Below, piece after piece: positions 34,601-55,562 of a stretch of DNA of 64,000 nucleotides. A program made the position numbers and the translations under genes. The DNA lies in the IMG/VR virus record IMGVR_UViG_3300029922_000001, positions 372,001 to 436,000 of that record. One strand, written 5' to 3'. Below the pieces are notes generated by a model. It had not been told where the DNA came from. It worked only from the letters and a program-made list of their open reading frames with translations, and searched no databases. Position 1 is the first letter of the stretch. Each line of letters starts with the position of its first letter.

Positions 34601-34602
34601 AA

Positions 34603-36405: not shown

Positions 36406-36429
36406 AAGAAATTGAGGTATACTCGAAAC

Positions 36430-36678: not shown

Positions 36679-36741
36679 AAAATCCCCAATAAGGAAAATT
36701 GAGGTATACTAAACACAACGAACGGAGAATACGAAAACAAA

Positions 36742-37692: not shown

Positions 37693-37770
37693 AAATCCCC
37701 AATGGGGAAAATCAAGGTATACTGGGAATGTAAGAAACATTCTCAGTAACGAGAAGAAAAATAGGAGACT

Positions 37771-39963: not shown

Positions 39964-40010
39964 ATTCTAAGAAAATCCCCAACAATGGGGATTCGAGGTA
40001 TATTAATTTT

Positions 40011-40271
40011 ATGAAGAATTCTAAAGTGATTGATTATTTACTATGTTTGTTTGATGGATATCAACATTGGGGAAGAAATCACGAAAAAGATAAATCCGAT
40101 AATAAAATTACTGTTATTCAATTTTATTATCCAAGTACATTTGATAAGTTAATGAATTCTTTATCTAATGGCATTGAAGATGGTGGTCAAATAATTAATA
40201 TTACAGATGAAATTATTGAATTACAACGTTCAGAAGATTTAATCACTATGACTGTTCAGGGTTGGATTTAA
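40011..40271 (+). CDS. hypothetical protein
   Basis: Leaderless behind class-B variant (TATATT). Confidence 0.7.
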   Translation: MKNSKVIDYLLCLFDGYQHWGRNHEKDKSDNKITVIQFYYPSTFDKLMNSLSNGIEDGGQIINITDEIIELQRSEDLITMTVQGWI

Positions 40272-40308
40272 AAATCCCCAATAGAAAAATTCGAGGTATA
40301 TTTATTTT

Positions 40309-40527
40309 ATGGGACATATGAGATTAACCTTTGAACAGAAGCAATTGATTAAGAAGCTAGATAAGCAATTGATTGAATTGTCTAAAAATCAAAAAGAGAA
40401 TAAGAGAATCATCAATGACACTCTTAAACAGATTAATAATCTGTATAGCTTTTGCGACCATCAATATAAACATTTTAATCATACTGGAGAGTTGATATGT
40501 GCTTATTGTGGTCACGTTCATGAGTGA
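40309..40527 (+). CDS. small coiled-coil/Zn-finger protein
   Basis: CDH...CAYCG; leaderless. Confidence 0.7.
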   Translation: MGHMRLTFEQKQLIKKLDKQLIELSKNQKENKRIINDTLKQINNLYSFCDHQYKHFNHTGELICAYCGHVHE

Positions 40528-40570
40528 TTTTAAAAATCCCCAATAAAGAATTAAGAGGTATACTGCCAAC

Positions 40571-41275
40571 ATGAAAACACTTAGATCGGTTGCAGCAATT
40601 GAAAAATCGTCCAACTCGAAAATTGGAATTGCATCTACTACTTATGCTTCGCAAGAATCTTGTCCTAAGACTTGTATGTTCTATAATAACGGTTGCTATG
40701 CAGGTTTGGGTCTAACAGGTATTCACACTAAACGATTAAACCGAAGTGGCGTTACTGACATTGTTGAGATTGCTAAGGCAGAAGCTGAAGGAATCCGGTC
40801 TTTGACAGGTTGTTACAATCTAAGAATCCATACGGTTGGGGATTGTAAGACTGATGAAACAGCTAAGATTGTTTCAGATGCGGCAAAGGATTTTATGTCA
40901 AAAGATGGCAAAATCGCTTGGACCTATACTCATGCTCATGATGTTAAACGTGAGTCATGGGGTAGCGTGAGTATCTTACGTAGTTGTGAGACTATCGCGC
41001 AAGTCAAGCAAGCACATAGCGATGATTATGCAAGTGCAATGGTTGTATCTGAGTTTGAATCTGATAAGCCTTATGATATAGGTGAGGGATTCACCGGTAT
41101 CCCTTGTCGCAATCAAGTTAATAAAGAGATTACTTGCACTAAGTGTAAGCTATGCTTTAATGATAAGGTCTTGCACAAGTCCAAAAGAGTCATCTTGTTC
41201 GCTAGTCATGGCACAATGAAGGGTACAGTTAATAAAACACTAAAAGTACTTAATCTCCCAAATGACAAAAACTAA
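40571..41275 (+). CDS. Gp88-like Fe-S/Cys protein
   Basis: SCPKTC...GCYA; LRIHTVGD; WTYT; C-terminal C..C.KC.LC. Confidence 0.65.
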   Translation: MKTLRSVAAIEKSSNSKIGIASTTYASQESCPKTCMFYNNGCYAGLGLTGIHTKRLNRSGVTDIVEIAKAEAEGIRSLTGCYNLRIHTVGDCKTDETAKIVSDAAKDFMSKDGKIAWTYTHAHDVKRESWGSVSILRSCETIAQVKQAHSDDYASAMVVSEFESDKPYDIGEGFTGIPCRNQVNKEITCTKCKLCFNDKVLHKSKRVILFASHGTMKGTVNKTLKVLNLPNDKN

Positions 41276-41277
41276 GA

Positions 41278-41311
41278 TTCAGGGAATGCAAATTCCCTGA
41301 ATTAATTTTTT
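41278..41311 (+). terminator. intrinsic terminator
   Basis: TTCAGGGAAT-GCAA-ATTCCCTGAA plus T tract. Confidence 0.85.
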
Positions 41312-41603
41312 AGCTTTTTATTGAGAACCATCTACTCTATTAGTGTATAGATAAAAGGTTTCCCCGAAAATGGGGAAACCTCCGAAATCCCAGCATTGAT
41401 AAGTCAATTACTCACAGCTAAAGCAGTGGGCTTGTTTTTGGTCGTGATAGGGGTTGCAGTCAGCACCATGACAATATTAGTATTGGGTTGGGTTGTAGGC
41501 ATTGGGGTATTATTATTATTGTTTGCTATGGTTAACTGGTTTGTCAACATCTGTTGTCCACGTAAAATCCCCAATAGGTGAATTGAGGGTATACTAGAAA
41601 CTT

Positions 41604-41676
41604 GTCCCGGTAGCTCAGTGGATAGAGCAACAGCCTTCTAAGCTGTGGGTCGCAGGTTCGAATCCTGTTCGGGACG
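41604..41676 (+). tRNA. trnR: tRNA-Arg(UCU)
   Basis: Complete cloverleaf GTCCCGG...ACAGC-CTTCTAA-GCTGT...GCAGG-TTCGAAT-CCTGT-TCGGGAC-G; CCA not encoded. Confidence 0.95.
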
Positions 41677-41700
41677 CGAGATTTATGGTATAATAACATC

Positions 41701-41943
41701 ATGACAAAAAAAGTATTTGCCTTCGTTATGACTATTAGCATTATTGGTGCTTTGCTATTTGGTTGTAGTTTTGGTACTCAAGATTCCGTTAATGTAACAC
41801 CGATAATTTACACCTTTACCATTGATGGTAGAACCTATCAGTATCAAGATTGCACTTTCTATGAAAGTGGTCTTGCCCAATGTACTGATGATAAAGGTAA
41901 ACAAGTTGATATTAGCGGTAGCTATAAATCAGTGGAAAATTAA
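41701..41943 (+). CDS. small lipoprotein
   Basis: Lipobox LFGC. Confidence 0.7.
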   Translation: MTKKVFAFVMTISIIGALLFGCSFGTQDSVNVTPIIYTFTIDGRTYQYQDCTFYESGLAQCTDDKGKQVDISGSYKSVEN

Positions 41944-41977
41944 TCCCCAATAAAAAAATAACAGGTATACTCTGATC

Positions 41978-42106
41978 ATGAACACACACATTGAAGATAA
42001 GATTTGGTCAAACGATGATCCAAAGATGAAGAAGGTTTTGACAATGGTTTGGGCTGTTAGTTTGGTGATCGCAATCGCCATTGCTTTGGTTACGCTTATT
42101 GGTTAA
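41978..42106 (+). CDS. 42-aa single-pass membrane micro-protein
   Basis: Leaderless, bounded by class-B elements on both sides. Confidence 0.6.
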   Translation: MNTHIEDKIWSNDDPKMKKVLTMVWAVSLVIAIAIALVTLIG

Positions 42107-42140
42107 TCCCCAACGATTGGATTAAAGGTATACTGCACTT

Positions 42141-43247
42141 ATGAGTTCAAGATTCCACGTTGGAACCCTAACCAAAGCAAAACTTAAATCTCCACAGGTA
42201 GTACTACCTGTGAAGCAGAAGAAACTAGCCACCTTTCAAGAACGGGATACAATTCCTTCTACTGGTAATAAGGTAAGTTATCTTAACTCAATTAAGGGTC
42301 AAGAAAATCTAAAGGAGATGTTACAAATTCAAATAGATGCCTATAACAACTCTAAGGGTAGTGTAGGGCACTGGCTATTCACTGGTCCTTCAGGATTGGG
42401 TAAGACAAAGTTTGCTAACGCTTTTGCGGCTGATTTAGGACTGCCATTCTATCCGATTTTAGGTAATCGTATTAAGAAGTGGTCTGAAGTGGTCGCACTG
42501 CTTTCTAGAGTTCAAGAGAATGATATTATCTTCATTGACGAAATTCATGCTCTTAGACCTATGTTCCAAAATAACTTTTATAACATCTTACAGAATTTTA
42601 CTTTTGATGATATCGTTGAAGGTAGTGCTATAACCTATAAACTGCCTAAGTTTAGTTTATGGGGTGCCACTACTCATGTAGGTGATCTAAATGAAGCCTT
42701 AAAGAACCGTTTTACTGACATTGCGGAAATGGTCCCTTACACTCGAAATCAACTTACTAACATTATCGTAGAAACTGCTGCGAGTGAATTCGATGTTAAT
42801 ATTAATAATGAACTGGCTTATAAGATGTCTAATCTAGTGCGTGGCACTCCTAGATACGCTGTAAACATGATTCGGACGTTAGTTAAGGTGTCGAAAGCAT
42901 ATCAAACCGAAATTGATATAAAGGTTCTTACTAAAAGCTTGCAATTGAAGAATTTAGATCCGTTTCTAGGTTTAGATTTTACTGCACGTAAGTATCTCTT
43001 TGCTTTGTATGATAATGGGTCTATGGGAACGGCATCCATTGGTATCCACATTAATGAAGAAGAAAAAACTGTGATTGCATTAGAAAAATTCTTATTCTCT
43101 TATTTTGAAGTACCAGAACTTAACATTAAGGGACCATTGATTGTTAAAGGATTGGGTAAGAAACTTTCCCCTAATGGATTTAAGTACATTGATGGAATTC
43201 GAAAGTTAAAACAGAGTGGGTGGTTTCTAGCTGAGAACTGGGATTAA
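42141..43247 (+). CDS. ruvB: RuvB-like Holliday-junction branch-migration ATPase
   Basis: GQE.LK; GPSGLGKT; IFIDEIH; GATT; LKNRF; RGTPRYA. Confidence 0.85.
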   Translation: MSSRFHVGTLTKAKLKSPQVVLPVKQKKLATFQERDTIPSTGNKVSYLNSIKGQENLKEMLQIQIDAYNNSKGSVGHWLFTGPSGLGKTKFANAFAADLGLPFYPILGNRIKKWSEVVALLSRVQENDIIFIDEIHALRPMFQNNFYNILQNFTFDDIVEGSAITYKLPKFSLWGATTHVGDLNEALKNRFTDIAEMVPYTRNQLTNIIVETAASEFDVNINNELAYKMSNLVRGTPRYAVNMIRTLVKVSKAYQTEIDIKVLTKSLQLKNLDPFLGLDFTARKYLFALYDNGSMGTASIGIHINEEEKTVIALEKFLFSYFEVPELNIKGPLIVKGLGKKLSPNGFKYIDGIRKLKQSGWFLAENWD

Positions 43248-43293
43248 AAATAGGATATTTCCCCAATAGGGGAATTCGAGGTATACTAAATCT

Positions 43294-43509
43294 ATGGAAA
43301 AAATAGAACGTTATAATTCAATCGTTAAAATCGGTTATAAGCAACCACTACCACAGAACGGTGAAGTTTTCAGACTTGTTAAAAATGTTTTCCATGATGG
43401 TTTTAGTGTACATCAAACAAATATTGTAAATTCGAAAATCACCTATGATAGTGTGTTGCGAAAATCTAAAACTAAAAACCCATGTCAAAAGTTTTTCGAT
43501 AATCTTTAA
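43294..43509 (+). CDS. hypothetical protein
   Basis: Leaderless behind class-B promoter. Confidence 0.6.
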   Translation: MEKIERYNSIVKIGYKQPLPQNGEVFRLVKNVFHDGFSVHQTNIVNSKITYDSVLRKSKTKNPCQKFFDNL

Positions 43510-43527
43510 GGGTATAATATATTCATT

Positions 43528-44232
43528 ATGAATGTCGTACACTGTTCCCTTGTTGGTAGTCGAATGCATGGATTAAATACCGAAAATTCTGATTATGATT
43601 ATCGAACGATTTATAAAATGGATCTGAAAGATATTCTTGATCCTTTTATTAAACCTGAAGAAAAAAAGGTATTAGAAGATGGACAAGATGTTGAAGAATT
43701 TGAATTAAGGCATTTTTTGAAGATGTTATGTGGAGGCAACGGTACCGCATACGAAATCCTTTGGAGTGATCAATACACAACGTCACCAGACTTTCAAGTA
43801 TTCAAAGACAATAAGCACTGGTTCTTGAATACAAAGGGTATCTGTAATGCTCATATTGGTTATGCCGATTCTCAGCTAGAAAACTTTTTAGAGAAAGTCG
43901 AAAAAGATCCTACCGCATTAGATAAGTCTAATGCAAGGAATCGAATTCGAAAAGCTTCTGTAGCTGGTATCCGTATTCTATGTCAAGCAGAACAGTTGCT
44001 ATTGACAGGTGATTTTGCACCAAAGATTGCTGACTATAATAAGAATGTAGCAGATTATCTATTGGAACAGAAGTACACTCCTGATGATCAGATTAATGCA
44101 GATTTTATCACTAGGAATATTGAGATAATCGAAGGACTGAAATTTGATGTAAAGAAACTCCATGAGAATGTTCCTGTAGTTCTGCCTCAATATGATCAGA
44201 TTGTTGAAGCTTTGGTCGCAATTTATTCATAA
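43528..44232 (+). CDS. Pol-beta-superfamily nucleotidyltransferase (RlaP-like)
   Basis: VGSRMHGLNTENSDYDYR; ELRHFLKML..GN..AYEILWS. Confidence 0.8.
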   Translation: MNVVHCSLVGSRMHGLNTENSDYDYRTIYKMDLKDILDPFIKPEEKKVLEDGQDVEEFELRHFLKMLCGGNGTAYEILWSDQYTTSPDFQVFKDNKHWFLNTKGICNAHIGYADSQLENFLEKVEKDPTALDKSNARNRIRKASVAGIRILCQAEQLLLTGDFAPKIADYNKNVADYLLEQKYTPDDQINADFITRNIEIIEGLKFDVKKLHENVPVVLPQYDQIVEALVAIYS

Positions 44233-44399
44233 TATTAGGTATACTAAACATATGACAAAATTTTTAACGAATCTTTTGATTTTCTTGATTTGTGTTGCTA
44301 TTGCTTTAGGCATTTCGTTCTATACACTTTGTTGTATTCTAGATCATAGAATCATTATGTAAAATTCCCCAATAGGGGAAACCGAGGTATACTCAGATT

Positions 44400-44615
44400 A
44401 TGGTTAAAATCGAATGGAAAGAGATTATTCATCCTAATAATTTTAGAGAAATGACAACAACAATTAATGGGGATAATTGGAGTGTGTATCAATTAACTTG
44501 GAGAACAAAATTTAAAGCACATAAAAACAAAACAAGTCAAAATCCAATTTGTTATCAACCTTTTGATTCTGAAGAAAAAGCAATTCAATTTGTAGAGAAC
44601 AAATATAATGGCTAA
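44400..44615 (+). CDS. hypothetical protein
   Basis: Leaderless behind class-B promoter. Confidence 0.65.
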   Translation: MVKIEWKEIIHPNNFREMTTTINGDNWSVYQLTWRTKFKAHKNKTSQNPICYQPFDSEEKAIQFVENKYNG

Positions 44616-44877
44616 CAATAGACGTAAGTGGCATTGCCTTGATTGTGGTAAAGATTGTGGATCAAAAGGTTTGTGTGAACATTATTTTATTCACACCAAC
44701 CTATGGATGCAAGCAGTTGGTAGCAATAAGGGAATGTTATGTGTTCAAGATCTTGAAAAAAGATTAGGTAGACAATTAACTCCTGCTGATTTTACAGATT
44801 GCCACATAAACGATCCTAAAAAAAACACAATGTCCCCTAGACTTTTATCAAGAATCAGGGGTAAAATCCATGCATGA
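44608..44877 (+). CDS. Cys-rich hypothetical protein
   Basis: CLDC...LC...LE.RLGR.LTPADF. Confidence 0.7.
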   Translation: MANNRRKWHCLDCGKDCGSKGLCEHYFIHTNLWMQAVGSNKGMLCVQDLEKRLGRQLTPADFTDCHINDPKKNTMSPRLLSRIRGKIHA

Positions 44878-45287
44878 TTGTGTATCGCGTAGAGACAGTT
44901 AGCGGGGTAGGACCCTACATAGAACGTAATGCACCACAAATACTTTATGATGCTGTAACCCATCCTTCATGCAGAAATGATGAATTGCCAGGATGTAACA
45001 ACTATAAGAAGGTAGAAGATAAACATTATTGGGGATTTCGAACGATTGAACAGTTGCATGATTGGTTCCATTACATTTATGAAAAATTTGAAAGACATAG
45101 TTATGTAGTGGCTATATACAATGTCTCTAAAGATTATGTCTTGGAGTTTAAATCACAGTTAGTGTTTGAAAAAGATAAATCAGAATTGCAAGAAACATTT
45201 CGTGTCAATAATTTCTTTGAGGCATTTAGTGGTGAGCATCAACTCTATTTGAATCTCCCCAACACAAAAATTGTAGGTATACTCTAA
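44874..45287 (+). CDS. hypothetical protein
   Basis: VYRVE...GPY...GF...QL.DWF. Confidence 0.7.
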   Translation: MIVYRVETVSGVGPYIERNAPQILYDAVTHPSCRNDELPGCNNYKKVEDKHYWGFRTIEQLHDWFHYIYEKFERHSYVVAIYNVSKDYVLEFKSQLVFEKDKSELQETFRVNNFFEAFSGEHQLYLNLPNTKIVGIL

Positions 45288-45289
45288 CA

Positions 45290-45523
45290 ATGAAAGGTAT
45301 TTTTGAAATTGAAACCAATGATCTTACTCAAATGATTCTATCAATGGGACATAAAGATTCATTAATGGTTTCATCTCAAAATGGTGATGATGGTGCATAT
45401 GAATTTTATTGTATTCATGATTGTATTTTTATTTTCGATGATAATTTAGAACTTATTTTCTCTGTTAATAAAAATAAATATGAATTAACAATGTCAATCA
45501 ATGAAATTAAAAAATGGACTTAA
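45290..45523 (+). CDS. hypothetical protein
   Basis: Leaderless behind class-B promoter. Confidence 0.65.
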   Translation: MKGIFEIETNDLTQMILSMGHKDSLMVSSQNGDDGAYEFYCIHDCIFIFDDNLELIFSVNKNKYELTMSINEIKKWT

Positions 45524-45559
45524 AATCCCCAACACCAAAAAGAGAGGTATACTAGGAAC

Positions 45560-45769
45560 ATGATGATTTTCGAACTTTACAGGCGTTCTACTGGAATCAC
45601 GGTAGTAATAGCAAACACACTAGAAGAAGCAATAATTATGATTCGAAAAAGTGAGTTTGGTTATTTGTGGGACAATTTTGATGATAAGGAATTAGTTTCA
45701 CATATAACAATCAGCAATTTTGTTGGATCTGGTATGGTTTTTGGTGAAAATACAAGCGATAGAGATTAA
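45560..45769 (+). CDS. hypothetical protein (paralog of 46348-46551)
   Basis: Shared G.T.V.A.T.EEA...IR...YLW. Confidence 0.7.
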   Translation: MMIFELYRRSTGITVVIANTLEEAIIMIRKSEFGYLWDNFDDKELVSHITISNFVGSGMVFGENTSDRD

Positions 45770-45820
45770 TGGGATAATTTAGATAATCCCCAACACCAAA
45801 AAGAGAGGTATACTAGGAAC

Positions 45821-46348
45821 ATGAATACAATTCAAAATAAAGTACACGACAATAAGCCTTACAATGCGACTGCCGCATCTGCAAACGTGATTCGAGACAC
45901 CCGCGCTAAGAATGCTACTACAAAATTCTTGACTTCGCTTGGTTACACGATCACCGACAACTTGGAGCGATACGCAAAGTACGACCTTGCGGCAAATCAC
46001 CCTACATTTGGTACTGTAAAGATTGAATGCGAAGATCGTCTAATCCGTGATTGGACTAATATGGTCACTCGTTCTTTCAATAAGTTCCGAATCTATAAGC
46101 GAAAGATTAATAAAGAATCTGAATGGTTGTTGTATGTGGCAACTTGTGGCGATGATTCTAATCTGATCTTGATTACGACTCATGATGCAATTAGCAACTC
46201 TAAGGTAGTTATGATTACCAATAAGGGTTGGGGACAATTGGAACCGGTTTATGAAGTCGAACATACTGATTGGGTTTGCTACAATATGACAACTCAAAAG
46301 GTTGAATGGGGTGATAATCCTATCATCATGGGACTTCTAGGTAAGTAA
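45821..46348 (+). CDS. possible PD-(D/E)xK nuclease-fold protein
   Basis: YDL...KIECED pattern only. Confidence 0.45.
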   Translation: MNTIQNKVHDNKPYNATAASANVIRDTRAKNATTKFLTSLGYTITDNLERYAKYDLAANHPTFGTVKIECEDRLIRDWTNMVTRSFNKFRIYKRKINKESEWLLYVATCGDDSNLILITTHDAISNSKVVMITNKGWGQLEPVYEVEHTDWVCYNMTTQKVEWGDNPIIMGLLGK

Positions 46349-46551
46349 TGAATATTTACACAATCGAAAAAACGTCAAAAGGTTACACTTCTGTACTTGC
46401 TGAAACTCCAGAAGAAGCAGTACAGTACATTAGGGATACCACAAATCCTTATGCTTATCTTTGGAGTTGTTACCCTGATGATGAAATTATTATATCATTT
46501 AAAGTTACCCCTTTCAAGGGTGGTGTATTGTCAAATATTGACTACTATTAA
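46348..46551 (+). CDS. hypothetical protein (paralog of 45560-45769)
   Basis: See paralog. Confidence 0.65.
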   Translation: MNIYTIEKTSKGYTSVLAETPEEAVQYIRDTTNPYAYLWSCYPDDEIIISFKVTPFKGGVLSNIDYY

Positions 46552-46607
46552 GTATTGAGGGATTCGAAAGAATCCCCCAATACGAGTTTAAGAGGTATAC
46601 TTAGATC

Positions 46608-47036
46608 ATGCTAGATGAAGCATTTTATTCAGCTTTCACAAGAAAAAAACTATTTAGCAGTTATATTAAAATAGGAGATTATTCTTTTCAAGAAGGTGCT
46701 GATCTAGTGTTAAACAAAACACGATTGGAGTTTACCTATCGTATGGGGAAAAATCCTTATAACGTAGTATTCCAAGCTAAGAAACTATCACGTACAGGCA
46801 AAAGACTACTAATATCTCATCCCTATTGCAAACATTGTGGAATAGAGGGTGTTAAGTGGGGATTAGAAGCTAAAAAATACCATGTTCAAATGATTCTGTA
46901 TTCTGAGAACAATGTACCTCTAACCATTGATCATATTCTACCCAGATCAAAAGGTGGTTCTGATAGTCCAAAGAATTATCAAGTGCTATGTTATGCTTGT
47001 AATCAACGTAAAGCTGACTTTGAAAATCCCCAATAA
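46608..47036 (+). CDS. HNH endonuclease
   Basis: CKHCG...[30 protein letters not shown]. Confidence 0.9.
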
Positions 47037-47060
47037 AGAAATTTGAGGTATACTCTTATC

Positions 47061-47483
47061 ATGGAAAACGCACAACTTTTTGCACAACGAGCTTATGGAT
47101 ATGTCGGCAAGCAAACAGATCGTCCTAATAGTATAACTGATGAATGTGTAACTATTAATATTAATCATCAGGTAATAAAACGCCTTATTTGTATATTACG
47201 TGATCATCCAAAGTATTCTATGACTGATAGATATTCTGAGTTTATCAGTGATATGATTGATAAAATCATTATGAATAAAACAACATTAAAAGGACTTTAT
47301 ATACCCAAAGTTACAAAATCATTTTTTGTTATATCTCCAAATGGTGAAATTATTATAGTTAGCAATCAATCGAAATTTTGTAAAGATAACAATTTAGACT
47401 CAACAAGTTTTAGTAGAATGCTTAACGGTAAAAGAAAATCATCTCAAGGTTGGACTAAATATATCCCCAATAAAGAAATTTAA
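47061..47483 (+). CDS. protein with NUMOD1-like HTH tail
   Basis: VISPNGE...SKFCKDNNLD...SRMLNGKRK..QGW. Confidence 0.55.
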   Translation: MENAQLFAQRAYGYVGKQTDRPNSITDECVTININHQVIKRLICILRDHPKYSMTDRYSEFISDMIDKIIMNKTTLKGLYIPKVTKSFFVISPNGEIIIVSNQSKFCKDNNLDSTSFSRMLNGKRKSSQGWTKYIPNKEI

Positions 47484-47497
47484 GGTATACTCTGATC

Positions 47498-47758
47498 ATG
47501 AAAGTAAGAGCTAATTCGAGTTATATTTATCACCCTTGTCTTTTGGATGTTTGCGATGGTAGAACAGACCTAGTAAAAGGTGATCTTGTGGTAGTTAAGA
47601 ATCTACCAGGTTGTCCTAAGTGTAATATAATGAATCATGCACACGTCTATAAAGATGATAAATTTGCTGGTCTAGTTTGTTGCGCTTCATTGTATTCTCC
47701 AAAGGAATACCCTAAGTTGCTTGCCGAATGGGAAGCAAGGAATGCACAAAATGCTTAA
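47498..47758 (+). CDS. hypothetical protein
   Basis: Leaderless behind class-B promoter. Confidence 0.7.
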   Translation: MKVRANSSYIYHPCLLDVCDGRTDLVKGDLVVVKNLPGCPKCNIMNHAHVYKDDKFAGLVCCASLYSPKEYPKLLAEWEARNAQNA

Positions 47759-47987
47759 AAAAGTACATAACTTCACCATTAAATTGGTGATTACTATTAT
47801 ATTGGGAGTAATGTTACTGCCAATGATTGCATCTTGTGTTAAAGTGATTCCAGCTTTGCATCCTTGGGGAATTGGACCATTAAAATGTCACTATCTTGTG
47901 ACTATAATCCCAAAGTATGAGCAAAGAAAAATTGTTGATGAATTGGAACAACCAGGACCATGTTATCACAATAACCATAAGAAGTGA
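47751..47987 (+). CDS. membrane-anchored hypothetical protein
   Basis: Hydrophobic N-terminus. Confidence 0.5.
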   Translation: MLKKVHNFTIKLVITIILGVMLLPMIASCVKVIPALHPWGIGPLKCHYLVTIIPKYEQRKIVDELEQPGPCYHNNHKK

Positions 47988-48002
47988 TGTATAACGGAAT
48001 AT

Positions 48003-48185
48003 ATGAAGAAGAAAAAAACTCATATATTCCGTTTTCATTTTGATGCAACATTAGTAGATGTTGATGTAGAAGCTTTAAACATTAGAGAAGCTTTTCGTAT
48101 TATGAACAAAGAACATCCTGAGTATAGTACAGGATTTATGATATTACGAAAAGATGAATCAGGATCTTGGATTCAGATTGATTAG
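48003..48185 (+). CDS. hypothetical protein
   Basis: ATG after TATAAC. Confidence 0.55.
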   Translation: MKKKKTHIFRFHFDATLVDVDVEALNIREAFRIMNKEHPEYSTGFMILRKDESGSWIQID

Positions 48186-48260
48186 TGTATAGATGAAAGG
48201 TTTTCCTGAAAATGGGGAAACATAAATCCCCATTAATCAAAATTAAGGTATACTTTGTTT

Positions 48261-48761
48261 ATGATTACGTTTACACATGAAGATGGGAATGTTTTACACC
48301 TATCAACTGTTACAGATAAGGAATTCTATCTCAAACATAAAGAAGTTTACTTTGATGATGAGCCAGAAATCATACCTCATTGTAGTGGTGTTATTATTAG
48401 GCATGGTCACGATATTTGGATTGTAGAACCTTTTAATCACTTTAGCGGATATCACTATTCATTCGCTAAGGGGAGGCTAGAAAAGCATTTAACACCCCAA
48501 CAGAATGCACTTAAAGAAGTATGGGAAGAAAGCGGTTTAATTGTCACTATTGATGGTTATGTTGGCGATGTTCTCAATAATAGATTTTACACTGGTGTTG
48601 CAATTGGTGGAAGTCCCAATAAGTTTGATTGGGAAACTCAAGCTGTTCATTTAGTCGATATTCCAATGGCTAGAAGTTTATTTGAGCATCAAGGTAAGCC
48701 TATTCCGATTCAAGGACTAGAATTATTTGAACAGTGGCTAGAAAGAAATCCCCAACCATAA
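48261..48761 (+). CDS. Nudix hydrolase
   Basis: FAKGRLEKHLTPQQNALKEVWEESG. Confidence 0.85.
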   Translation: MITFTHEDGNVLHLSTVTDKEFYLKHKEVYFDDEPEIIPHCSGVIIRHGHDIWIVEPFNHFSGYHYSFAKGRLEKHLTPQQNALKEVWEESGLIVTIDGYVGDVLNNRFYTGVAIGGSPNKFDWETQAVHLVDIPMARSLFEHQGKPIPIQGLELFEQWLERNPQP

Positions 48762-48782
48762 AATTTGAGGTATACTAAGATT

Positions 48783-49049
48783 ATGAATTGGAAAGTACGT
48801 TATTGGATTTTATCTGCTGCTTTACTTCTTAGTATTGTTACATCTTTGGGTTGTGGAGATGAATCACGATCAACATTCAGCCTTACACTAGCTAACACTC
48901 TTTTCCCAACTGCTCAAAATAAGGTAGTAGAAGGTGAAGGTGTGACATTTGAAGTTATTCTAGGAAATAAGATAAGAAAGTTATTCCTAGTAGACTATAA
49001 CAGTAATCCTATTATTACCTGTATTGAAGGTTGTGGAGAAACACGATAA
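48783..49049 (+). CDS. lipoprotein
   Basis: Lipobox SLGC; leaderless. Confidence 0.65.
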   Translation: MNWKVRYWILSAALLLSIVTSLGCGDESRSTFSLTLANTLFPTAQNKVVEGEGVTFEVILGNKIRKLFLVDYNSNPIITCIEGCGETR

Positions 49050-49342
49050 TGTTGAATTTTATCAAAGCTAATAAATGGAATTTAGTTATCATGGCATTTG
49101 TAATTGTGATTGCGATTAATCTTGCTGGATATATTAAACAACATGGTCCTATCTTACCTATTCCTTTACAAGTTAGCAACCGTGGTAGGACGTTTAGAGA
49201 ATTAAGTGTAGAATATACAGATGTAAAATCATCAATGATAGAAGATGAAAATGAAATGAAATATCATCTTCAGGATATTAAAACTGGCGAACGATTCTGG
49301 ACTTATGATTTGAATGGTGATGGAGCATTGTATCCAGAATGA
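49049..49342 (+). CDS. membrane-anchored hypothetical protein
   Basis: N-terminal TM segment. Confidence 0.6.
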   Translation: MLNFIKANKWNLVIMAFVIVIAINLAGYIKQHGPILPIPLQVSNRGRTFRELSVEYTDVKSSMIEDENEMKYHLQDIKTGERFWTYDLNGDGALYPE

Positions 49343-49554
49343 AAGTACTTTATAGCTACATTGATCAGTATGGCACCAAATTTGAAATAAGGGAAGCACT
49401 TCCTGAAGGTTATTCTTGTTGGCTAATTCTATCTGAAAAAGACGGTGGAATTACTAGACAATGTGGTTTTCCTTTGGAAAAGATTCTTGAGTTAATTGAA
49501 GAGAATAATCAAATGCAAGGAATTATTAAAAAATTAATGGAGAATAAGAAATAA
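49339..49554 (+). CDS. hypothetical protein
   Basis: ORF track. Confidence 0.6.
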   Translation: MKVLYSYIDQYGTKFEIREALPEGYSCWLILSEKDGGITRQCGFPLEKILELIEENNQMQGIIKKLMENKK

Positions 49555-49748
49555 TGTTTATTTATCATCTGTTTAAAAACATCGTTTACAATGCAACTAT
49601 TACGGTATGTGTCTCTATTCTAATGCTAGGTGTCTATAGTATTAAAATTGCATTTACTAGTTTCTTGATTTTTCTATGTGTTTTGTGTCTACTTGATGGC
49701 ATCATTGGTTACTATAAAGAACGTAGAAAATCCCCAACAAAGAATTAA
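49554..49748 (+). CDS. small membrane protein
   Basis: Two TM segments. Confidence 0.55.
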   Translation: MFIYHLFKNIVYNATITVCVSILMLGVYSIKIAFTSFLIFLCVLCLLDGIIGYYKERRKSPTKN

Positions 49749-49764
49749 AAGGTATACTTTGATC

Positions 49765-49947
49765 ATGAACTTATGGAAAATCTTTAAAAAATATTTTTTC
49801 TCAAATTTGCGTTTTAAATTTATCGCTACGCTATTTTTGTCAGCAATTCTTGCTGCTTGTGGTTTACATTTAATTGACATAATTATTGTTGCCACTATTT
49901 ATTTTATTGTATGGTGCTTTTGTGGTGTTTTGGCAATGCTTTTATAG
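49765..49947 (+). CDS. small membrane protein
   Basis: Leaderless behind class-B promoter. Confidence 0.6.
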   Translation: MNLWKIFKKYFFSNLRFKFIATLFLSAILAACGLHLIDIIIVATIYFIVWCFCGVLAMLL

Positions 49948-49970
49948 TTATCAAAAAGGAGTGAATAATA

Positions 49971-50297
49971 TTGGAAATTTCTAACGATTACATGGTTTTG
50001 CTTTTTAATGCCCAACATCAATATCGTCGTAACTGGTTGGGAAGTGGTACAGATCAAAAGGTATATAATCTAAAATATCAAGGTAAAACCTTTAGCGAGA
50101 TTCAAGAACAATTTAAAAATTGTAAAATCTATGTTTATAACAAAACTAAAAATATGGATGTTCTAATTTATGACAAAAATGGTAATGTCCTTAGTCGTTT
50201 TGGTAGTAATTACCAATTAAGCGAATTTGAAGTATTAATTGAACCTATTGACACAAGTGTTAAATACTTTGTGTGGTTTGGTAAAAAATTACAATAA
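49971..50297 (+). CDS. hypothetical protein
   Basis: SD AAGGAG. Confidence 0.65.
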   Translation: MEISNDYMVLLFNAQHQYRRNWLGSGTDQKVYNLKYQGKTFSEIQEQFKNCKIYVYNKTKNMDVLIYDKNGNVLSRFGSNYQLSEFEVLIEPIDTSVKYFVWFGKKLQ

Positions 50298-50339
50298 TTT
50301 TAAAACCCCCAACACTCGAATAAGAGGTATACTCCTAAT

Positions 50340-50774
50340 ATGAGAACGGATTTACCAGATTTTTCTAATATTTTATGGATACCAATTGAAGATATTTTTA
50401 ATTCATGGTTATCAATTGATAGTTCTAAAATTAAGTTAGGTCCGCAAGAACGAACCTATGAAGAGTGGATGAACTTACTTAATTATAAAAGAAAAAATAG
50501 GGGATATGAAACAGTTTTACCTTTGTTGACTGAAACAGGTTTTCTTCGTCCTTTAGCTTTCCGAACATACAATAAAAATTTATATTTACCTAATGGTCAT
50601 CATCGTTTAACAGCGGCGTATGATTTGGGTTACAAGTATATACCATTTGTTGAAGCTGTAGATGGACAATCAGCATACTATGATATACATGAATTTGAAG
50701 ATTCAGAATTGTGGTCTTTGATTCATCCTGAAAATCCATTGCCTACAAATCCAAAAATCCAAAAACCCCAATAG
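50340..50774 (+). CDS. ParB/Srx-like paralog A
   Basis: WIPIEDI...GFLRPL...NGHHRLTAAYDLGYKYIP. Confidence 0.75.
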   Translation: MRTDLPDFSNILWIPIEDIFNSWLSIDSSKIKLGPQERTYEEWMNLLNYKRKNRGYETVLPLLTETGFLRPLAFRTYNKNLYLPNGHHRLTAAYDLGYKYIPFVEAVDGQSAYYDIHEFEDSELWSLIHPENPLPTNPKIQKPQ

Positions 50775-50798
50775 CGGAATAAGAGGTATACTAAGATC

Positions 50799-51086
50799 AT
50801 GATAATCGGTCAACGACTTACAGATTTTCGGAAAGACTATGAAAATCCTAATATTGTAGATTTTCTATGGGAAAATCGAAAACATTTTCTCACAAACAAC
50901 TCAATAGATACTAGTGATCAATGGGGTTTGGTTACAAAGATTGAAGGACCATATTCTTCACCAATCTACAATGAATCTGTAAAGTACAAATATGTAAAAG
51001 AAGCACTATCGGATCAGGGTATCATCATGGAATTTATCCGTCATAATGGCAAACTTCGATTCACAATTTCCCCAACACTCGAATAA
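50799..51086 (+). CDS. hypothetical protein
   Basis: Leaderless behind class-B promoter. Confidence 0.7.
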   Translation: MIIGQRLTDFRKDYENPNIVDFLWENRKHFLTNNSIDTSDQWGLVTKIEGPYSSPIYNESVKYKYVKEALSDQGIIMEFIRHNGKLRFTISPTLE

Positions 51087-51102
51087 GAGGTATACTCAGA
51101 TC

Positions 51103-51609
51103 ATGCCACGCGGAAGAAAACCACTAGATTTCACTTTTATGTCTTACCAGGATGCTAAAGTTTATGTTCGAAAGAACGGTATCCGAAGTCTCGCCCAATG
51201 GCAGGACTTTTGCAGTAAGAACAAACGACCTGACAATATCCCTGCCGCTCCCAATATTAAGTATAAGGACGAATGGGAAGGCTTTCCTGAGTTTCTAGGC
51301 TATACTGCCAGTGGTCGCGGACGACCAGCAGGTAGCGTAAATCGTCCTAAAGAAGAAAGGGATCAAGATAAAGAAAGTACCAATATCTTCGAAGATCGCC
51401 CAATTAATACAGTAATGTATACTTACGAAGAGGCTAAGGCATGGTGCTATAAGTTGCGCTACACTAAGGCTATGTACAAGAAGTTCATTACTGATTACAC
51501 CTATCAGGTTCCAGGTTCTTGCAGTTCCAGACTTCCTAAGAATCCTTCGGAGTTCTATCCTGAATTTGATGCAAATGACTTCTATTACACTGAAGGGGAT
51601 AATGTCTAA
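51103..51609 (+). CDS. putative DNA-binding protein, paralog of 28665-29147
   Basis: RGRKPL.F.SY.DAK.YV...RPDNIPAAP...W.GFPEFLGYTASGRGRP; second degenerate unit. Confidence 0.75.
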   Translation: MPRGRKPLDFTFMSYQDAKVYVRKNGIRSLAQWQDFCSKNKRPDNIPAAPNIKYKDEWEGFPEFLGYTASGRGRPAGSVNRPKEERDQDKESTNIFEDRPINTVMYTYEEAKAWCYKLRYTKAMYKKFITDYTYQVPGSCSSRLPKNPSEFYPEFDANDFYYTEGDNV

Positions 51610-51829
51610 AAAGATCAATACTAATAATGCAACCTTCTCTAAAAAGAGGGTTGCAAAAGCTTGTCTTAATACACCACAATATGCTTTTAAGACTATTAAG
51701 GTTAAAATAAGACCTAAAAAAGTTATGGATACTGTACAATCTCCACAACCAAAACAACTTAATCTGTTGGAATTTTTGCTAAAGATTTTTTAAAATCCCC
51801 AACGAGTAAATAAGAGGTATACTCAGATC

Positions 51830-52081
51830 ATGGAAACAATTAATCAAACAAATTTTCAAGCTGTTTTTGTTAATACAAATAAAGCTCCAATTGAAACACA
51901 ACATATTTACTGGTACACTAGAGAAATTAATCTCGTTGGTGATTCTCCAAAGATTGCGTTAATTGAAGTAGTGCGTGAAAAATATCAACATCCTGACGCT
52001 GAAAATGATGCAGTTATTTGGCTTCTCAATGAACATCAACGTCAAATTACAGATAAATACAATGGAGAGGATTTATTCTAG
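51830..52081 (+). CDS. hypothetical protein
   Basis: Leaderless behind class-B promoter. Confidence 0.7.
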   Translation: METINQTNFQAVFVNTNKAPIETQHIYWYTREINLVGDSPKIALIEVVREKYQHPDAENDAVIWLLNEHQRQITDKYNGEDLF

Positions 52082-52188
52082 GATTGCATCATGCTCAAAA
52101 TACTACTTGCGATTCAGTAAAGGTGTATTAATACTGGATGCGCGCCATAAATCCCCAACGAGTAAATAAGAGGTATACTAAAAACACA

Positions 52189-52443
52189 ATGAACGAATTC
52201 CCACAGTTTCCAGCTTGGATGATGCCTTCAAAGGCTGTAATGCTCACTGCTATGAAAACCGCGAACAGCATTCTTTGGACATTCATTTTTTTCGCCCTTG
52301 CTTTCACTTTGAAAGAAACGTCTCTTGCACATGACGTGCAATATGCATATCAATTCGGTATGTTCACAATGGCTTGTACTGTACTTGCTTGGATGGCGGT
52401 ACTGCATCAAGTTTGGACTGATCCAAAGTCCAAGACAGAGTAA
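52189..52443 (+). CDS. membrane protein
   Basis: Two TM segments; behind class-B promoter. Confidence 0.7.
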   Translation: MNEFPQFPAWMMPSKAVMLTAMKTANSILWTFIFFALAFTLKETSLAHDVQYAYQFGMFTMACTVLAWMAVLHQVWTDPKSKTE

Positions 52444-52527
52444 GTGCATTAAAATTAATCTTTGAATTATAATAAATCAAGGATTAGAGAAAATCCCCAA
52501 TAGAAAATTAAGAGGTATACTAAAAGC

Positions 52528-52797
52528 ATGAGTAAGCGAACAGAAACCTTTAGCAGAGATTTGGTACTCAAATTGATTAATAATCATTTGAGACAAATTA
52601 AACAATGGAAGTCATTGAGTAGTCTAGAATTAGCTATTAAATGTCGTGAAAACGCAACAGCTTTGATTGAGATGCTAGAGTCAGAAGATTGTGGTTCTTG
52701 GGGTGGACATGATCCAGAAGATCCAAAATGTGGCAAACACGCTGATATTTATTCTCGTTATGAGTGGTTAAGAGATAGACCAAAAAATCCCCAATAG
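52528..52797 (+). CDS. hypothetical protein
   Basis: Leaderless; ends KNPQ*. Confidence 0.7.
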   Translation: MSKRTETFSRDLVLKLINNHLRQIKQWKSLSSLELAIKCRENATALIEMLESEDCGSWGGHDPEDPKCGKHADIYSRYEWLRDRPKNPQ

Positions 52798-52824
52798 AAA
52801 ATTAAGAGGTATACTAGGAGTACA

Positions 52825-53295
52825 ATGAAAACAATTTCACGAAATGCGATTGCTGAAAAGCTAAAGGACACTGCAAAGGGAACACGGATCATCGGAGTGC
52901 AATATACTACCGAACCAAAGGTAAAGAAGTCTTGCCCGTTCGCAAATCTTCAGAAGCATACTCAAAGTACGGTTATGCTTGGTGTTAACTACGCTAACCG
53001 TTTGGCGGCTAAAGGTGAACAACCTGCTGGCGTAGACCCTTACTTTGAGGACATTGACGGTCAAAACTGGCTTGTTCGCCATAAGACCAACGGTACAGAA
53101 TACTTGCGGGTTTCACCAACTGGTAACAACTTTGCAAAGTCATTCTACACTTCTGATGGTGTAGATGTTGACTCAGACTTGGTAAAGGAACATCTTTACG
53201 CTAAGGCTGAAGGGGTACCTGAAGTATTCTTGATCAAACTTGCAAACATTCGTAACATCTCACTCAATGGTGAGCAGTACCAGATTGTAGGTTAA
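52825..53295 (+). CDS. hypothetical phage protein
   Basis: 156 aa; followed by a terminator. Confidence 0.8.
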   Translation: MKTISRNAIAEKLKDTAKGTRIIGVQYTTEPKVKKSCPFANLQKHTQSTVMLGVNYANRLAAKGEQPAGVDPYFEDIDGQNWLVRHKTNGTEYLRVSPTGNNFAKSFYTSDGVDVDSDLVKEHLYAKAEGVPEVFLIKLANIRNISLNGEQYQIVG

Positions 53296-53309
53296 GCCAC
53301 AATCTAACG

Positions 53310-53347
53310 AAATGAGACTGAGGGAATAATCTCTCAGTCTCATTTTT
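53310..53347 (+). terminator. intrinsic terminator
   Basis: AATGAGACTGAG/CTCAGTCTCATT plus T tract. Confidence 0.85.
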
Positions 53348-53420
53348 ATATATTTAAGCGTATAATTCAAATCCTTTATACGTTTTAGTGTATAGATCGA
53401 AGTGATAGACGAAAATGGGG

Positions 53421-53460
53421 AAATCTCCGACAACATGCTAAAATCTCCGAGAACATGCTA
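53421..53460 (+). repeat. 20-bp tandem repeat
   Basis: AAATCTCCGA(C/G)AACATGCTA x2, abutting a class-C element and a TATAAT. Confidence 0.85.
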
Positions 53461-53469
53461 TAATAAAGT

Positions 53470-53859: not shown

Positions 53860-53893
53860 TCCCCAATAACCAAACCAGAGGTATACTTAATTC

Positions 53894-54388: not shown

Positions 54389-54407
54389 TTAGAGGTATAC
54401 TTAGATC

Positions 54408-55548: not shown

Positions 55549-55562
55549 GGTATAATCTGATT

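What the first reader, a model, noticed from the sequence alone, without database searches (positions are those of the whole stretch)
45524..45824. Neighbouring promoter copies are identical across the variable spacer: a signature of duplicative cassette insertion
Seen: 40-bp identity 45524-45563 = 45785-45824; 32 bp 56942-56973 = 57155-57186; 31 bp 51793-51823 = 52149-52179; 33 bp 52490-52522 = 52784-52816; 29 bp 35409-35437 = 36396-36424; 39 bp with 1 mismatch at ~62578 and ~62967; near-identical pairs at ~47024/47462 and ~50306/51070. Distant copies usually differ in the N13 spacer. Each pair brackets a gene or short run of genes unrelated to its neighbours. Inference: new genes enter with a duplication of the local element (Campbell-type integration of a circle, or template switching), or local gene conversion is at work. 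Flanked genes could also be excised as circles.
Basis: partly seen in the sequence, partly recalled or inferred. Interest (0 to 1): 0.78.

Follow-up and report, generated by a model that had tools for sequence, protein, structure and literature searches.

The report
Recombining early-promoter repeats in huge phage
In a roughly 520-kb uncultivated peat phage, more than 100 copies of one early-promoter-like motif act as short recombination sites where small genes are gained, lost and swapped and where neighbouring copies overwrite each other, a known kind of phage genome plasticity seen here with a new motif.

Summary
The window is part of an array of 103 same-strand copies of (A)ATCCCCAAY-N12-GGTATACT-N6-ATG. 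Six adjacent pairs have identical 13-nt spacers where permutation expects 0.27 (p<5e-5), and near-identity falls steadily with distance.

- **Cassette gain and loss at the elements is real.** A 244-bp cassette is duplicated 90 kb away, with both junctions in GGTATACT boxes. A 1,162-bp segment is present or absent in the population, and the form lacking it has a hybrid promoter. One well-assembled contig lacks exactly one cassette plus one promoter copy. In a diverged relative (80-97% nucleotide identity), eight of ten differences have at least one junction in an element, five of them both.
- **Spacer identity is not a reliable mark of duplicative insertion.** Four of the five datable indels are flanked by unlike promoters. 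At a locus whose two genes are syntenic in both phages, different promoter pairs are identical in each phage. This shows short-tract conversion between neighbours.
- **The one robust empty site is probably a derived deletion.**

The closest known system is the PeSL cassettes of T4-type phages. This case has a different promoter motif, usually lacks the stem-loop, and adds neighbour conversion. Circles could not be tested.

The parts
905..63895 (+). Window part of an array of about 87 promoter-like elements, (A)ATCCCCAAY-N12-(A/G)GGTATACT-N6-ATG. Each usually heads one small ORF. The array runs on both sides of the window (genome 341.5 kb to beyond the record's end).
45524..45563 (+). Left copy of the 40-nt identical pair. 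It heads the 69-aa ORF 45560-45769.
45785..45824 (+). Right copy of the 40-nt pair. It heads the 175-aa ORF. It is orthologous, including about 20 nt of upstream flank, to the single copy in relative R (L084:9968).
45564..45784 (+). 221-nt cassette body (69-aa ORFan). The cassette plus one promoter copy (261 nt) is precisely absent in contig L011 from JGI sample 3300029911.
35409..36424 (+). Identical 29-nt pair (35409-35437 / 36396-36424) around the 320-aa ORF 35443-36405. An empty allele is seen only in a 537-nt MEGAHIT contig (L035) and may be an assembly collapse.
47026..47503 (+). Near-identical pair (1 spacer mismatch) around the 140-aa ORF 47061-47483, which has a PHROG HNH-endonuclease-like C-terminal part. 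Relative R has a single promoter and no such ORF here.
50307..51097 (+). Identical 28-nt pair Px/Pz around the 144-aa (ParB-like) and 95-aa ORFs, with the unlike promoter Py (50766) between them. Both genes are syntenic in R, where Py=Pz instead. This is the evidence for conversion.
51793..52179 (+). Identical 31-nt pair around the 83-aa ORF 51830-52081.
52490..52816 (+). Identical 33-nt pair around the 89-aa ORF 52528-52797. A third identical spacer lies 13 kb downstream. An empty allele is seen only in a Logan k=31 contig (L024 = run X4) and is weak evidence.
56942..57186 (+). Identical 32-nt pair around the 58-aa ORF 56978-57154. No variant is seen in the contigs that span it.
62577..63005 (+). 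39-nt pair with 1 mismatch around the 121-aa response-regulator-receiver ORF 62612-62977.
61599..61842 (+). 244-nt cassette (76-aa ORF), bounded on both sides by GGTATACT. It is duplicated at 97.5% identity at genome 342853-343096, where it has no -35 box upstream.
40011..40308 (+). 86-aa ORF plus a following promoter, absent in R. The junctions lie in GGTATATT-N6-ATG. The promoter after it carries the spacer that R has one gene further downstream.
49732..50306 (+). 575-nt segment (two small ORFs) absent in R. Both junctions lie in the CCCCAA box.

Best explanation
The elements are the early promoters of a T4-like-in-part, roughly 520-kb phage. Their -10 box TATACT sits 6 nt before ATG, so most early mRNAs would be leaderless. 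That they are promoters is inferred from sequence and position, not shown.

More than 100 copies lie head-to-tail at intervals of 0.2-1 kb. Their two conserved boxes (AATCCCCAA, about 9 nt, and (A/G)AGGTATACT, about 9-12 nt) and the ATG act as dispersed microhomologies for the phage's own homologous-recombination and replication machinery. Three outcomes follow.

1. Crossovers or template switches in a box delete, insert, duplicate or replace the gene cassettes between elements. They leave hybrid promoters: the -35 box and spacer of one element joined to the N6 and gene of another. This step is shown.
2. Short-tract, non-reciprocal exchange between nearby elements, anchored in the boxes, overwrites the 13-27 nt between them. 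The result is identical neighbouring cores, with a frequency that decays with distance. This is shown comparatively at two loci. The enzymology is inferred.
3. The resulting 29-40-nt perfect direct repeats are efficient substrates for precise deletion of the cassette between them, possibly as a circle. The deletion is shown for one pair. The circle is inferred.

Some identical pairs may also arise when a cassette enters by two switches at different boxes, which re-copies the target promoter.
For: Array and statistics.

Intragenomic cassette copy with both junctions in GGTATACT.

Population indel of 1,162 bp. The short form has a hybrid promoter (spacer TAAAAAATCAAGA of the left element with N6 CTGATC and the 147-aa gene of the right element). 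The crossover lies within the shared AAGAGGTATACT, and the flanks are 100% identical. The short form is in at least 6 assemblies. The long form is in the 521-kb ENA contig. The repeat is only 12 nt, so this is not an assembly artefact..

L011, an 8.8-kb JGI contig, lacks exactly 261 nt between the 40-nt repeats.

Every structural difference among about 60 population contigs (at least 99.97% identical) maps to an element.

Relative R (80-97% nucleotide identity, same motif):
- Five indels have both junctions inside an element. Three lie in the -10 region (the 110-aa ORF, the 119+97-aa ORFs, and the 86-aa ORF in -10/N6/ATG). Two lie in the -35 box (the 140-aa ORF present only in R, and the 60+108-aa ORFs).
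- Three further differences have at least one junction in an element.
-.

Conversion:
- Of 7 promoters with both flanks orthologous, 5 differ by 0-1 nt in the spacer. The other 2 have replaced cores that equal a neighbouring promoter in one of the genomes. These are Py in R, which equals Pz of R at 26 of 27 positions, and the R DUF7227 promoter, whose spacer equals our promoter 262 nt upstream.
- Our Px=Pz and R's Py=Pz occur although the 144-aa and 95-aa genes are syntenic (79% and 87% aa identity).
-.

A RecA/UvsX-like recombinase is encoded and no tyrosine integrase is found.
Against: - No RNA data, so promoter function and leaderless starts are unproven.
- The conserved (G/A)AGGT could double as a ribosome-binding site.
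- Insertion and deletion cannot be polarised with two genomes.
- No circle or read-level junction was observed (one search gave contigs only).
- Two of the three population 'empty sites' (L024, L035) could be low-coverage assembly collapses, because the repeats are as long as or longer than the smallest k.
- At 47028/47465, 45527/45788 and 359985/360293 the identical or near-identical pairs do coincide with lineage-specific genes, as duplicative insertion predicts.
- Conversion across only 6-12-nt anchors is unusual and its mechanism is not shown.
Confidence: 0.68

Rival explanations
1. Duplicative cassette insertion. Each identical pair is the scar of one insertion in which the target promoter was copied on both sides of the incoming gene. 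The route would be template switching at the -10 box out of the target and back in at the -35 box, or staggered breaks with fill-in.
For: - The identity tracts run from the -35 box to the -10 box, as this model predicts.
- The flanked genes are unrelated ORFans.
- R has a single promoter and no 140-aa ORF where our phage has the pair 47028/47465. Both our copies are 1 nt from R's spacer.
- The pairs at 45527/45788 and 359985/360293 also lie in segments that differ from R.
- An older 312-nt duplication (82% identity) that ends exactly at GGTATACT brackets an unrelated 177-aa gene.
Against: - The pair 50307/51070, and R's own pair 13956/14260, bracket genes that are syntenic in both phages. Those identities arose without insertion.
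- Four of the five simple indels between the phages, and the 1,162-bp population indel, are flanked by unlike spacers. Orthologous spacers change by only 0-1 nt at this divergence.
- At 45788 the right copy and its upstream flank are the ancestral ones. The event there looks like a promoter copy placed before an ORF, not a gene dropped into a promoter.
- The L011 empty site is probably derived.
Confidence: 0.22
2. Tandem duplication of promoter plus gene by unequal crossing-over, followed by divergence of the gene copies.
For: - Unequal crossing-over in the -10 box would give two promoters with the same spacer.
- Dispersed paralogue families exist: 50340/58276/63430, 28665/51103, and the D/D' pair at genome 365.1/366.0 kb.
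Against: - No gene bracketed by an identical pair is similar to its neighbour.
- Coding sequence could not diverge beyond recognition while 29-40 nt of largely unconstrained promoter stays identical.
Confidence: 0.03
3. Chance or selection. Spacers are drawn from a narrow functional consensus, so identical neighbours are coincidental or selected for co-regulation.
For: The spacer has a soft consensus (T-A-A/G-...-A-A-T-T-x-G-A).
Against: - Expected identical pairs from column frequencies are 0.3 against 14 observed.
- Adjacent identical pairs are 0.27 expected against 6 observed.
- Identity includes non-consensus bases and sometimes N6.
Confidence: 0.02
4. The presence/absence alleles are assembly artefacts, with repeat collapse at short direct repeats, and there is no real cassette polymorphism.
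For: - L024 is a k=31 Logan contig that crosses a 33-nt repeat, while the 'missing' segment still has depth in the same run.
- L035 is a 537-nt contig that crosses a 29-nt repeat.
- Many Logan contigs break at the repeats.
Against: - The 1,162-bp indel rests on a 12-nt shared box. It occurs in long contigs from at least 7 assemblies.
- L011 is an 8.8-kb multi-k JGI contig across a 40-nt repeat, and no cassette-bearing contig was recovered from that sample.
- The differences from R cannot be artefacts.
Confidence: 0.05

Closest known systems
PeSL (promoter-early stem-loop) cassettes of T4-type phages (Arbiol et al. 2010, PMC2839356; Comeau et al. 2014, PMC4122927)
   Same: - Many copies of an early-promoter motif lie in hyperplastic regions full of small ORFans.
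- Insertions, deletions and replacements between close relatives have their junctions inside the motif.
- Recombination between nearby copies removes a single ORF.
- The proposed carrier of transfer is a mini-circle.
- The phage carries T4-like early genes (rIIB, RNA ligase 1, Y00F, Y07B) and a RecA/UvsX-type recombinase.
   Different: - The motif is not sigma-70-like. It has a CCCCAA box centred near -30, a 13-nt spacer and GGTATACT, and no TTGACA.
- Most copies have no adjacent terminator stem-loop.
- Genes start 6 nt after the -10 box, which suggests leaderless mRNAs.
- The copies form one 100+-kb single-strand array in a roughly 520-kb genome.
- Crossovers map to 6-12-nt boxes.
- Homogenisation of neighbouring promoter cores was not mentioned in the passages of the first PeSL paper that I read; I read only the abstract and outline of the second.
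- Mini-circles are not shown here.
Integron gene cassettes (attI/attC with IntI)
   Same: Promoter-proximal array of single-gene cassettes bounded by a repeated site.
   Different: - No tyrosine recombinase is found in the 441-kb record.
- The repeat is a promoter, not an imperfect inverted repeat that folds as attC.
- Junction positions vary between the -35 box, the -10 box and the ATG, so this is homology-driven, not site-specific.
- Every cassette has its own promoter.
T4 middle promoters (MotA box at -30 plus a sigma-70 -10 box; sigma appropriation), Hinton 2010, PMC2988021 (title/abstract only; box geometry recalled from general knowledge)
   Same: A -10 hexamer of the TAnnnT type is combined with a non-sigma-70 box centred near -30.
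   Different: - The box sequence differs (CCCCAA, not TGCTT).
- No MotA or AsiA homologue was detected, although the controls show these Pfam searches had no positive control.
- The class and timing of transcription are unknown.
Concerted evolution / gene conversion of short dispersed repeats (for example bacterial REP/BIME elements, rRNA spacers)
   Same: Neighbouring copies are more alike than distant ones, and lineage-specific homogenisation occurs at orthologous sites.
   Different: The tract is only about 13-27 nt between 6-12-nt anchors, in a lytic-phage-like genome, and it is coupled to cassette turnover.

Membership tests
PeSL cassettes (T4-type phages) | Repeated motif contains a consensus sigma-70 early promoter (TTGACA-17-TATAAT) with an AT-rich upstream region | tested here: not met
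   The -10 box TATACT fits TAnnnT and the upstream region is A-rich. The -35 position holds CCCCAA. Sigma-70-type matches are not enriched: 72 found against 86.6 in shuffles. Motif alignment.
PeSL cassettes (T4-type phages) | Stem-loop (terminator) directly next to the promoter | tested here: not met
   18 terminator-like sites in 20 kb against 9.5 expected. Of the + strand sites, only the one at 58996-59021 lies directly upstream of an element (59031). About 18 copies have a short hairpin formed by the -35 box and the spacer. That hairpin is not followed by a T-run.
PeSL cassettes (T4-type phages) | Located in hyperplastic regions among small non-conserved ORFs | tested here: met
   The array has 103 elements heading ORFs, nearly all of 38-370 aa. 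Most have no Pfam or PHROG match. About a quarter of the genes differ between our phage and relative R.
PeSL cassettes (T4-type phages) | Indels and replacements between close relatives have their junctions inside the motif | tested here: met
   Five indels against R have both junctions in the boxes and three more differences have one. The 1,162-bp population indel leaves a hybrid promoter, and the 244-nt intragenomic copy ends in boxes on both sides.
PeSL cassettes (T4-type phages) | Mini-circles formed by recombination between flanking motifs (inverse PCR) | not testable with these tools
   Only Logan contigs of the runs are held, not raw reads. The 'goes back' joints have 32-33-nt sides and are k=31 repeat effects.
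Integron | IntI-type tyrosine recombinase next to the array | tested here: not met
   PF00589 has no match in the 441-kb record, while the controls ring in 14 of 14 genomes. The remaining 78 kb of the genome was not searched.
Integron | attC: an imperfect inverted repeat that folds and is cut at a fixed position | tested here: not met
   Junctions fall in the -35 box, the -10 box or at the ATG in different events. Most elements have no inverted repeat.
Bacterial/phage promoter read by a sigma-70-family holoenzyme | Transcripts start a few nt downstream of the -10 element | not testable with these tools
   No RNA run was laid, because the single read-laying run went to DNA contigs. Position only: in 77 of 103 elements the ATG begins 7 nt after the last base of TATACT.

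The most novel reading that the evidence does not exclude
The promoter array is an integrase-free, integron-like gene-capture system. The promoter core itself would be the attachment site, actively broken or copied. The -10 box carries the palindrome GTATAC, and free-standing HNH and GIY-YIG nucleases sit in the array. Repair would both install foreign ORFs with a ready-made leaderless promoter and homogenise neighbouring cores. On this reading promoter identity is a by-product of a dedicated acquisition mechanism, not of passive recombination.
Probability: 0.1. Interest if true: 0.85.

Novelty: new variant of a known kind. Interest (0 to 1): 0.6.

Why it matters
Huge phages carry hundreds of small genes of unknown function, and how they acquire and turn these over is poorly understood.

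This case shows, from natural population variants and a sister phage, that one repeated regulatory motif organises that turnover in a roughly 520-kb phage. Genes move as promoter-bounded cassettes, and the junctions can be read to the base.

It adds a point I did not find in the PeSL text I read. Neighbouring promoter cores overwrite one another, which creates perfect repeats that then make the enclosed gene easy to lose. Such identities should therefore not be read as insertion scars.

It also gives a defined new promoter motif with apparently leaderless genes. With a cultured host or RNA data, that motif could identify the polymerase or factor that reads it.

Tried and rejected
- **BLASTN of 8 kb against GenBank phages:** no match.
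- **Pattern scan of IMG/VR for the motif:** only 8 single, chance-level hits, so no other catalogued phage uses it.
- **JGI metagenome scan with the AAA ATPase:** returned only the same phage and two 34-38% relatives without the motif.
- **IMG/VR scan with a 63% homologue (P0003) of the 175-aa protein:** nothing.
- **Read laying:** gave only Logan contigs. It confirmed the 294-nt skip in one run but cannot separate a real allele from a k=31 collapse. The 'goes back' and 'opposite strand' joints are repeat effects.
- **Exact-protein look-ups of the 69-aa and 320-aa cassette proteins:** no second genomic context, so no donor was identified.
- **The 1,162-bp segment:** has no paralogue in the record.
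- **Apparent extra divergence beside the 1,162-bp indel:** this was an alignment effect of the hybrid spacer. The flanks are identical.
- **HNH 142-aa and the neighbouring 140-aa ORF:** not paralogues. The 86-aa and 72-aa ORFs are not paralogues either.
- **Pfam searches in the record:** no RNA-polymerase subunits and no T7-type polymerase. The MotA, AsiA and Gp23 searches found nothing, but their controls show they prove nothing.
- **Literature searches for the motif or for leaderless jumbo-phage early promoters:** nothing specific.
- **Three contigs that all start at 56933/4:** suggested another variant there, but none was found.

Full report
**What the window is**

The window is bases 372001-436000 of a 441,498-bp IMG/VR virus record from a peat metagenome. 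The record is not the whole genome. It ends inside one of the elements, and a 78,352-bp contig from the same JGI sample overlaps that end by 127 nt. An independent ENA assembly gives one contig of 521,591 bp. The last 100 kb of the record is coded on one strand only and is made of small ORFs. Pfam hits there include T4-type early genes: rIIB next to a 724-aa ORF, RNA ligase 1, Y00F and Y07B. Elsewhere the record encodes a RecA/UvsX-like protein and one ORF with sigma-70 region 2. No tyrosine integrase and no RNA-polymerase subunits are recognisable by Pfam.

**The element**

I found 103 copies on the + strand and 2 on the - strand, all between 341.5 and 441.5 kb. At least eleven more lie in the ENA extension.

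- The consensus is (A)ATCCCCAA, a 13-nt spacer with only a soft consensus, then GGTATACT.
- In 77 of 103 copies exactly 6 nt follow before an ATG that opens an ORF.
- If TATACT is a -10 hexamer, the CCCCAA box is centred near -30 and transcription would start at or next to the ATG, giving leaderless mRNAs.
- The motif is not sigma-70-like at -35, and sigma-70-type matches are not enriched.
- Promoter function is inferred from sequence and position only.
- The motif was not found as an array in any other IMG/VR contig.

**Check of the observation**

| Measure | Observed | Expected |
|---|---|---|
| Adjacent pairs with identical spacer | 6 | 0.27 (order permutation; never more than 4 in 20,000) |
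| Adjacent pairs with at most 1 mismatch | 8 | 0.90 |
| All identical pairs in the genome | 14 | 0.3 (column frequencies) |

The share of near-identical pairs falls from 14.6% below 0.5 kb to 0.3% above 32 kb. The identical tract is confined to the element. It runs from a few nt before CCCCAA to GGTATACT, and in two pairs on through N6 to ATGA. The bracketed genes are not paralogues of their neighbours.

**Evidence that the elements mediate cassette turnover**

1. *Intragenomic copy.* A 244-nt cassette (76-aa ORF, window 61599-61842) has a 97.5% identical copy at genome 342853-343096. Both ends of the shared segment are GGTATACT boxes. The distant copy has no -35 box upstream.
2. *A robust population indel.* About 60 contigs from other samples are at least 99.97% identical to the record. 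The only structural differences among them lie at elements.
   - Just past the record's end, a 1,162-bp segment (two ORFs, three promoters) is present in the 521-kb ENA contig and absent from at least six other assemblies.
   - The short form has a hybrid promoter: the -35 box and spacer of the left element joined to the N6 and gene of the right one.
   - The crossover lies inside the shared AAGAGGTATACT, and the flanks are 100% identical.
   - With a 12-nt repeat this cannot be an assembly collapse. It also explains why the JGI assembly broke there.
3. *Empty sites at identical pairs.*
   - L011, an 8.8-kb JGI contig, lacks exactly 261 nt: the 69-aa ORF plus one copy of the 40-nt repeat. No cassette-bearing contig was recovered from that sample.
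   - L011 shares the SNP 51062 C>G with L013, which carries the cassette. The empty allele is therefore most simply a derived deletion.
   - Two further empty alleles are weak. L035 lacks 987 nt at 35410/36397. L024 lacks 294 nt at 52495/52789. They are a 537-nt MEGAHIT contig and a k=31 Logan contig across repeats of 29 and 33 nt. In the second case the 'missing' segment still has depth in the same run.

**A diverged relative**

Exact-protein look-ups brought in scaffolds of a second peat phage, R, from the ENA GROS21 assemblies and Logan ERR11443616. R has 80-97% nucleotide identity in shared genes and the same promoter motif. About 17 kb could be compared.

| Difference between our phage and R | Junctions |
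|---|---|
| 110-aa ORF present only in R | both in the -10 box |
| 682-nt segment (119-aa + 97-aa ORFs) only in ours | both in the -10 box; R's promoter has the spacer of our promoter 682 nt upstream and the N6 of our downstream one |
| 86-aa ORF only in ours | both in GGTATATT-N6-ATG |
| 140-aa ORF only in R | both in the CCCCAA box |
| 575-nt segment only in ours | both in the CCCCAA box |
| 140-aa ORF only in ours (pair 47028/47465) | R has one promoter, 1 nt different from each of our two copies |
| Three replacements | at least one junction in an element |
| GIY-YIG gene in R | clean insertion away from any element, a different (homing-type) event |

Not every difference involves the boxes. 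A 2.1-kb indel inside the R population has one junction 17 nt before a -35 box and the other inside a gene.

**Why spacer identity is not an insertion scar**

- At this divergence, orthologous promoters keep their spacers. Of 7 promoters with both flanks orthologous, 5 differ by 0-1 nt.
- Four of the five simple indels above, all but the 47028/47465 case, are flanked by promoters with clearly different spacers. So is the 1,162-bp population indel. This is what a reciprocal crossover in a box gives. It is not what a duplicative insertion gives.
- The locus Px-144aa-Py-95aa-Pz is decisive. Both genes are present and syntenic in both phages (79% and 87% aa identity).
  - In R, Py and Pz match at 26 of 27 positions, including the rare GGTATATT variant and N6, and Px differs.
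  - The flanks of Py are conserved between the phages right up to CCCCAA and from the ATG on, but the 27 nt between differ at 10 positions.
  - The core was therefore overwritten from a neighbour without any change in gene content.
- A second case: the promoter of the DUF7227 gene in R has exactly the spacer that our phage carries 262 nt upstream, while our own DUF7227 promoter has another spacer.
This looks like a promoter core copied in front of a gene.

**Mechanism proposed**

The array offers many short, identically oriented microhomologies at close range to a phage that encodes its own recombinase.

- Crossovers or template switches in the boxes give deletions, insertions, duplications and replacements, with hybrid promoters. 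This is shown.
- Short non-reciprocal tracts anchored in the boxes homogenise neighbours. This is shown comparatively, and the enzymology is inferred.
- Perfect 29-40-nt repeats then favour precise loss of the enclosed gene. This is shown once, and the circle is inferred.
- Duplicative entry by two switches at different boxes remains possible for some pairs, for example 47028/47465, but it is not needed.

**Comparison with what is known**

The system works like the PeSL cassettes of T4-type phages. In those, repeated early-promoter/stem-loop motifs in hyperplastic regions are the crossover points of ORFan indels between close relatives and give mini-circles (PMC2839356; PMC4122927).

It fails two defining features of PeSLs as described: the sigma-70 consensus promoter and the adjacent stem-loop. 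It meets two others: a hyperplastic ORFan context and junctions inside the motif. Circles are untested. It is not an integron, because it has no integrase, no attC-like fold and variable junction positions.

I therefore file it as a new variant of a known kind. It is promoter-mediated modular shuffling with a new motif, in a roughly 520-kb phage, with neighbour conversion as an added feature.

**Limits**

- No transcript data.
- No raw reads.
- Only two genomes for polarity.
- The 78 kb of genome outside the record was not searched for enzymes.
- The relative is known only from scaffolds of at most 18 kb.

Noticed in passing
whole array, e.g. window 45527-45562: In 77 of 103 elements the ATG starts exactly 7 nt after the last base of TATACT, so most early genes would be leaderless. 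The conserved (G/A)AGGT before TATACT could act as a ribosome-binding site on read-through transcripts. Long genes outside the array show weak Shine-Dalgarno use (27%).
   Followed up: partly
end of the genome record (window coordinate about 69472, outside the window); L036, L049, L051: The 441,498-bp record rated 100% complete is not the whole genome. It stops inside a polymorphic promoter. A 78,352-bp contig overlaps it by 127 nt, and an ENA assembly gives 521,591 bp. The extension holds a UvrD-type helicase and more elements.
   Followed up: partly
e.g. window 33740-33765, 43258-43283, 44364-44389, 63866-63891: About 18 elements have a spacer beginning (T)(A/G)GGGG(A/T)TT that is complementary to the AATCCCC box. 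This forms a short hairpin over the -35 box. It may be a subclass with different regulation.
   Followed up: no
e.g. window 36397-36405, 52789-52797, 62969-62977: CCCCAATAG and CCCCAATAA often supply the stop codon of the upstream ORF, so cassette ORFs read into the next promoter.
   Followed up: no
window 46608-47036 and 47061-47483; L084:6361-7035; L078:2293-2961: Free-standing homing-endonuclease-type genes lie inside the array. Our phage has an HNH gene (142 aa) and a 140-aa ORF with an HNH-like PHROG hit. The relative has a GIY-YIG gene on the opposite strand and a 222-aa HNH gene next to a tRNA-like sequence. Our phage has tRNA-Leu(UAA) at genome 359405-359485.
   Followed up: partly
window 56933-56934: Three independent assemblies (L063, L065, L068) start their contig 8-9 nt before the 56942 repeat. 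This suggests an unresolved variant at that promoter, but none was found.
   Followed up: partly
window 19600-23150: A tandem family of 4-5 paralogous genes carries runs of a 9-nt repeat (ACTCCTAAT / ACTCCTAGA), which would encode Thr-Pro-rich linkers.
   Followed up: no
window about 28490-28530, minus strand: One full element lies on the minus strand (genome 400524), near the + strand element at 28629. It may be a divergent promoter pair in an otherwise one-strand array.
   Followed up: no
genome 365111-365422 and 365964-366278 (upstream of the window): A 312-nt segment (an 83-aa ORF plus a promoter) is duplicated at 82% identity around an unrelated 177-aa gene. The duplication ends exactly at GGTATACT. 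The two spacers differ at 6 of 13 positions, more than the ORF does.
   Followed up: partly
window 62612-62977: One cassette encodes a stand-alone response-regulator receiver domain (Pfam PF00072, E 2e-9), an unusual early phage gene.
   Followed up: no
all elements: The -10 box contains the 6-bp palindrome GTATAC, a possible nuclease or methylase target. No test was made.
   Followed up: no
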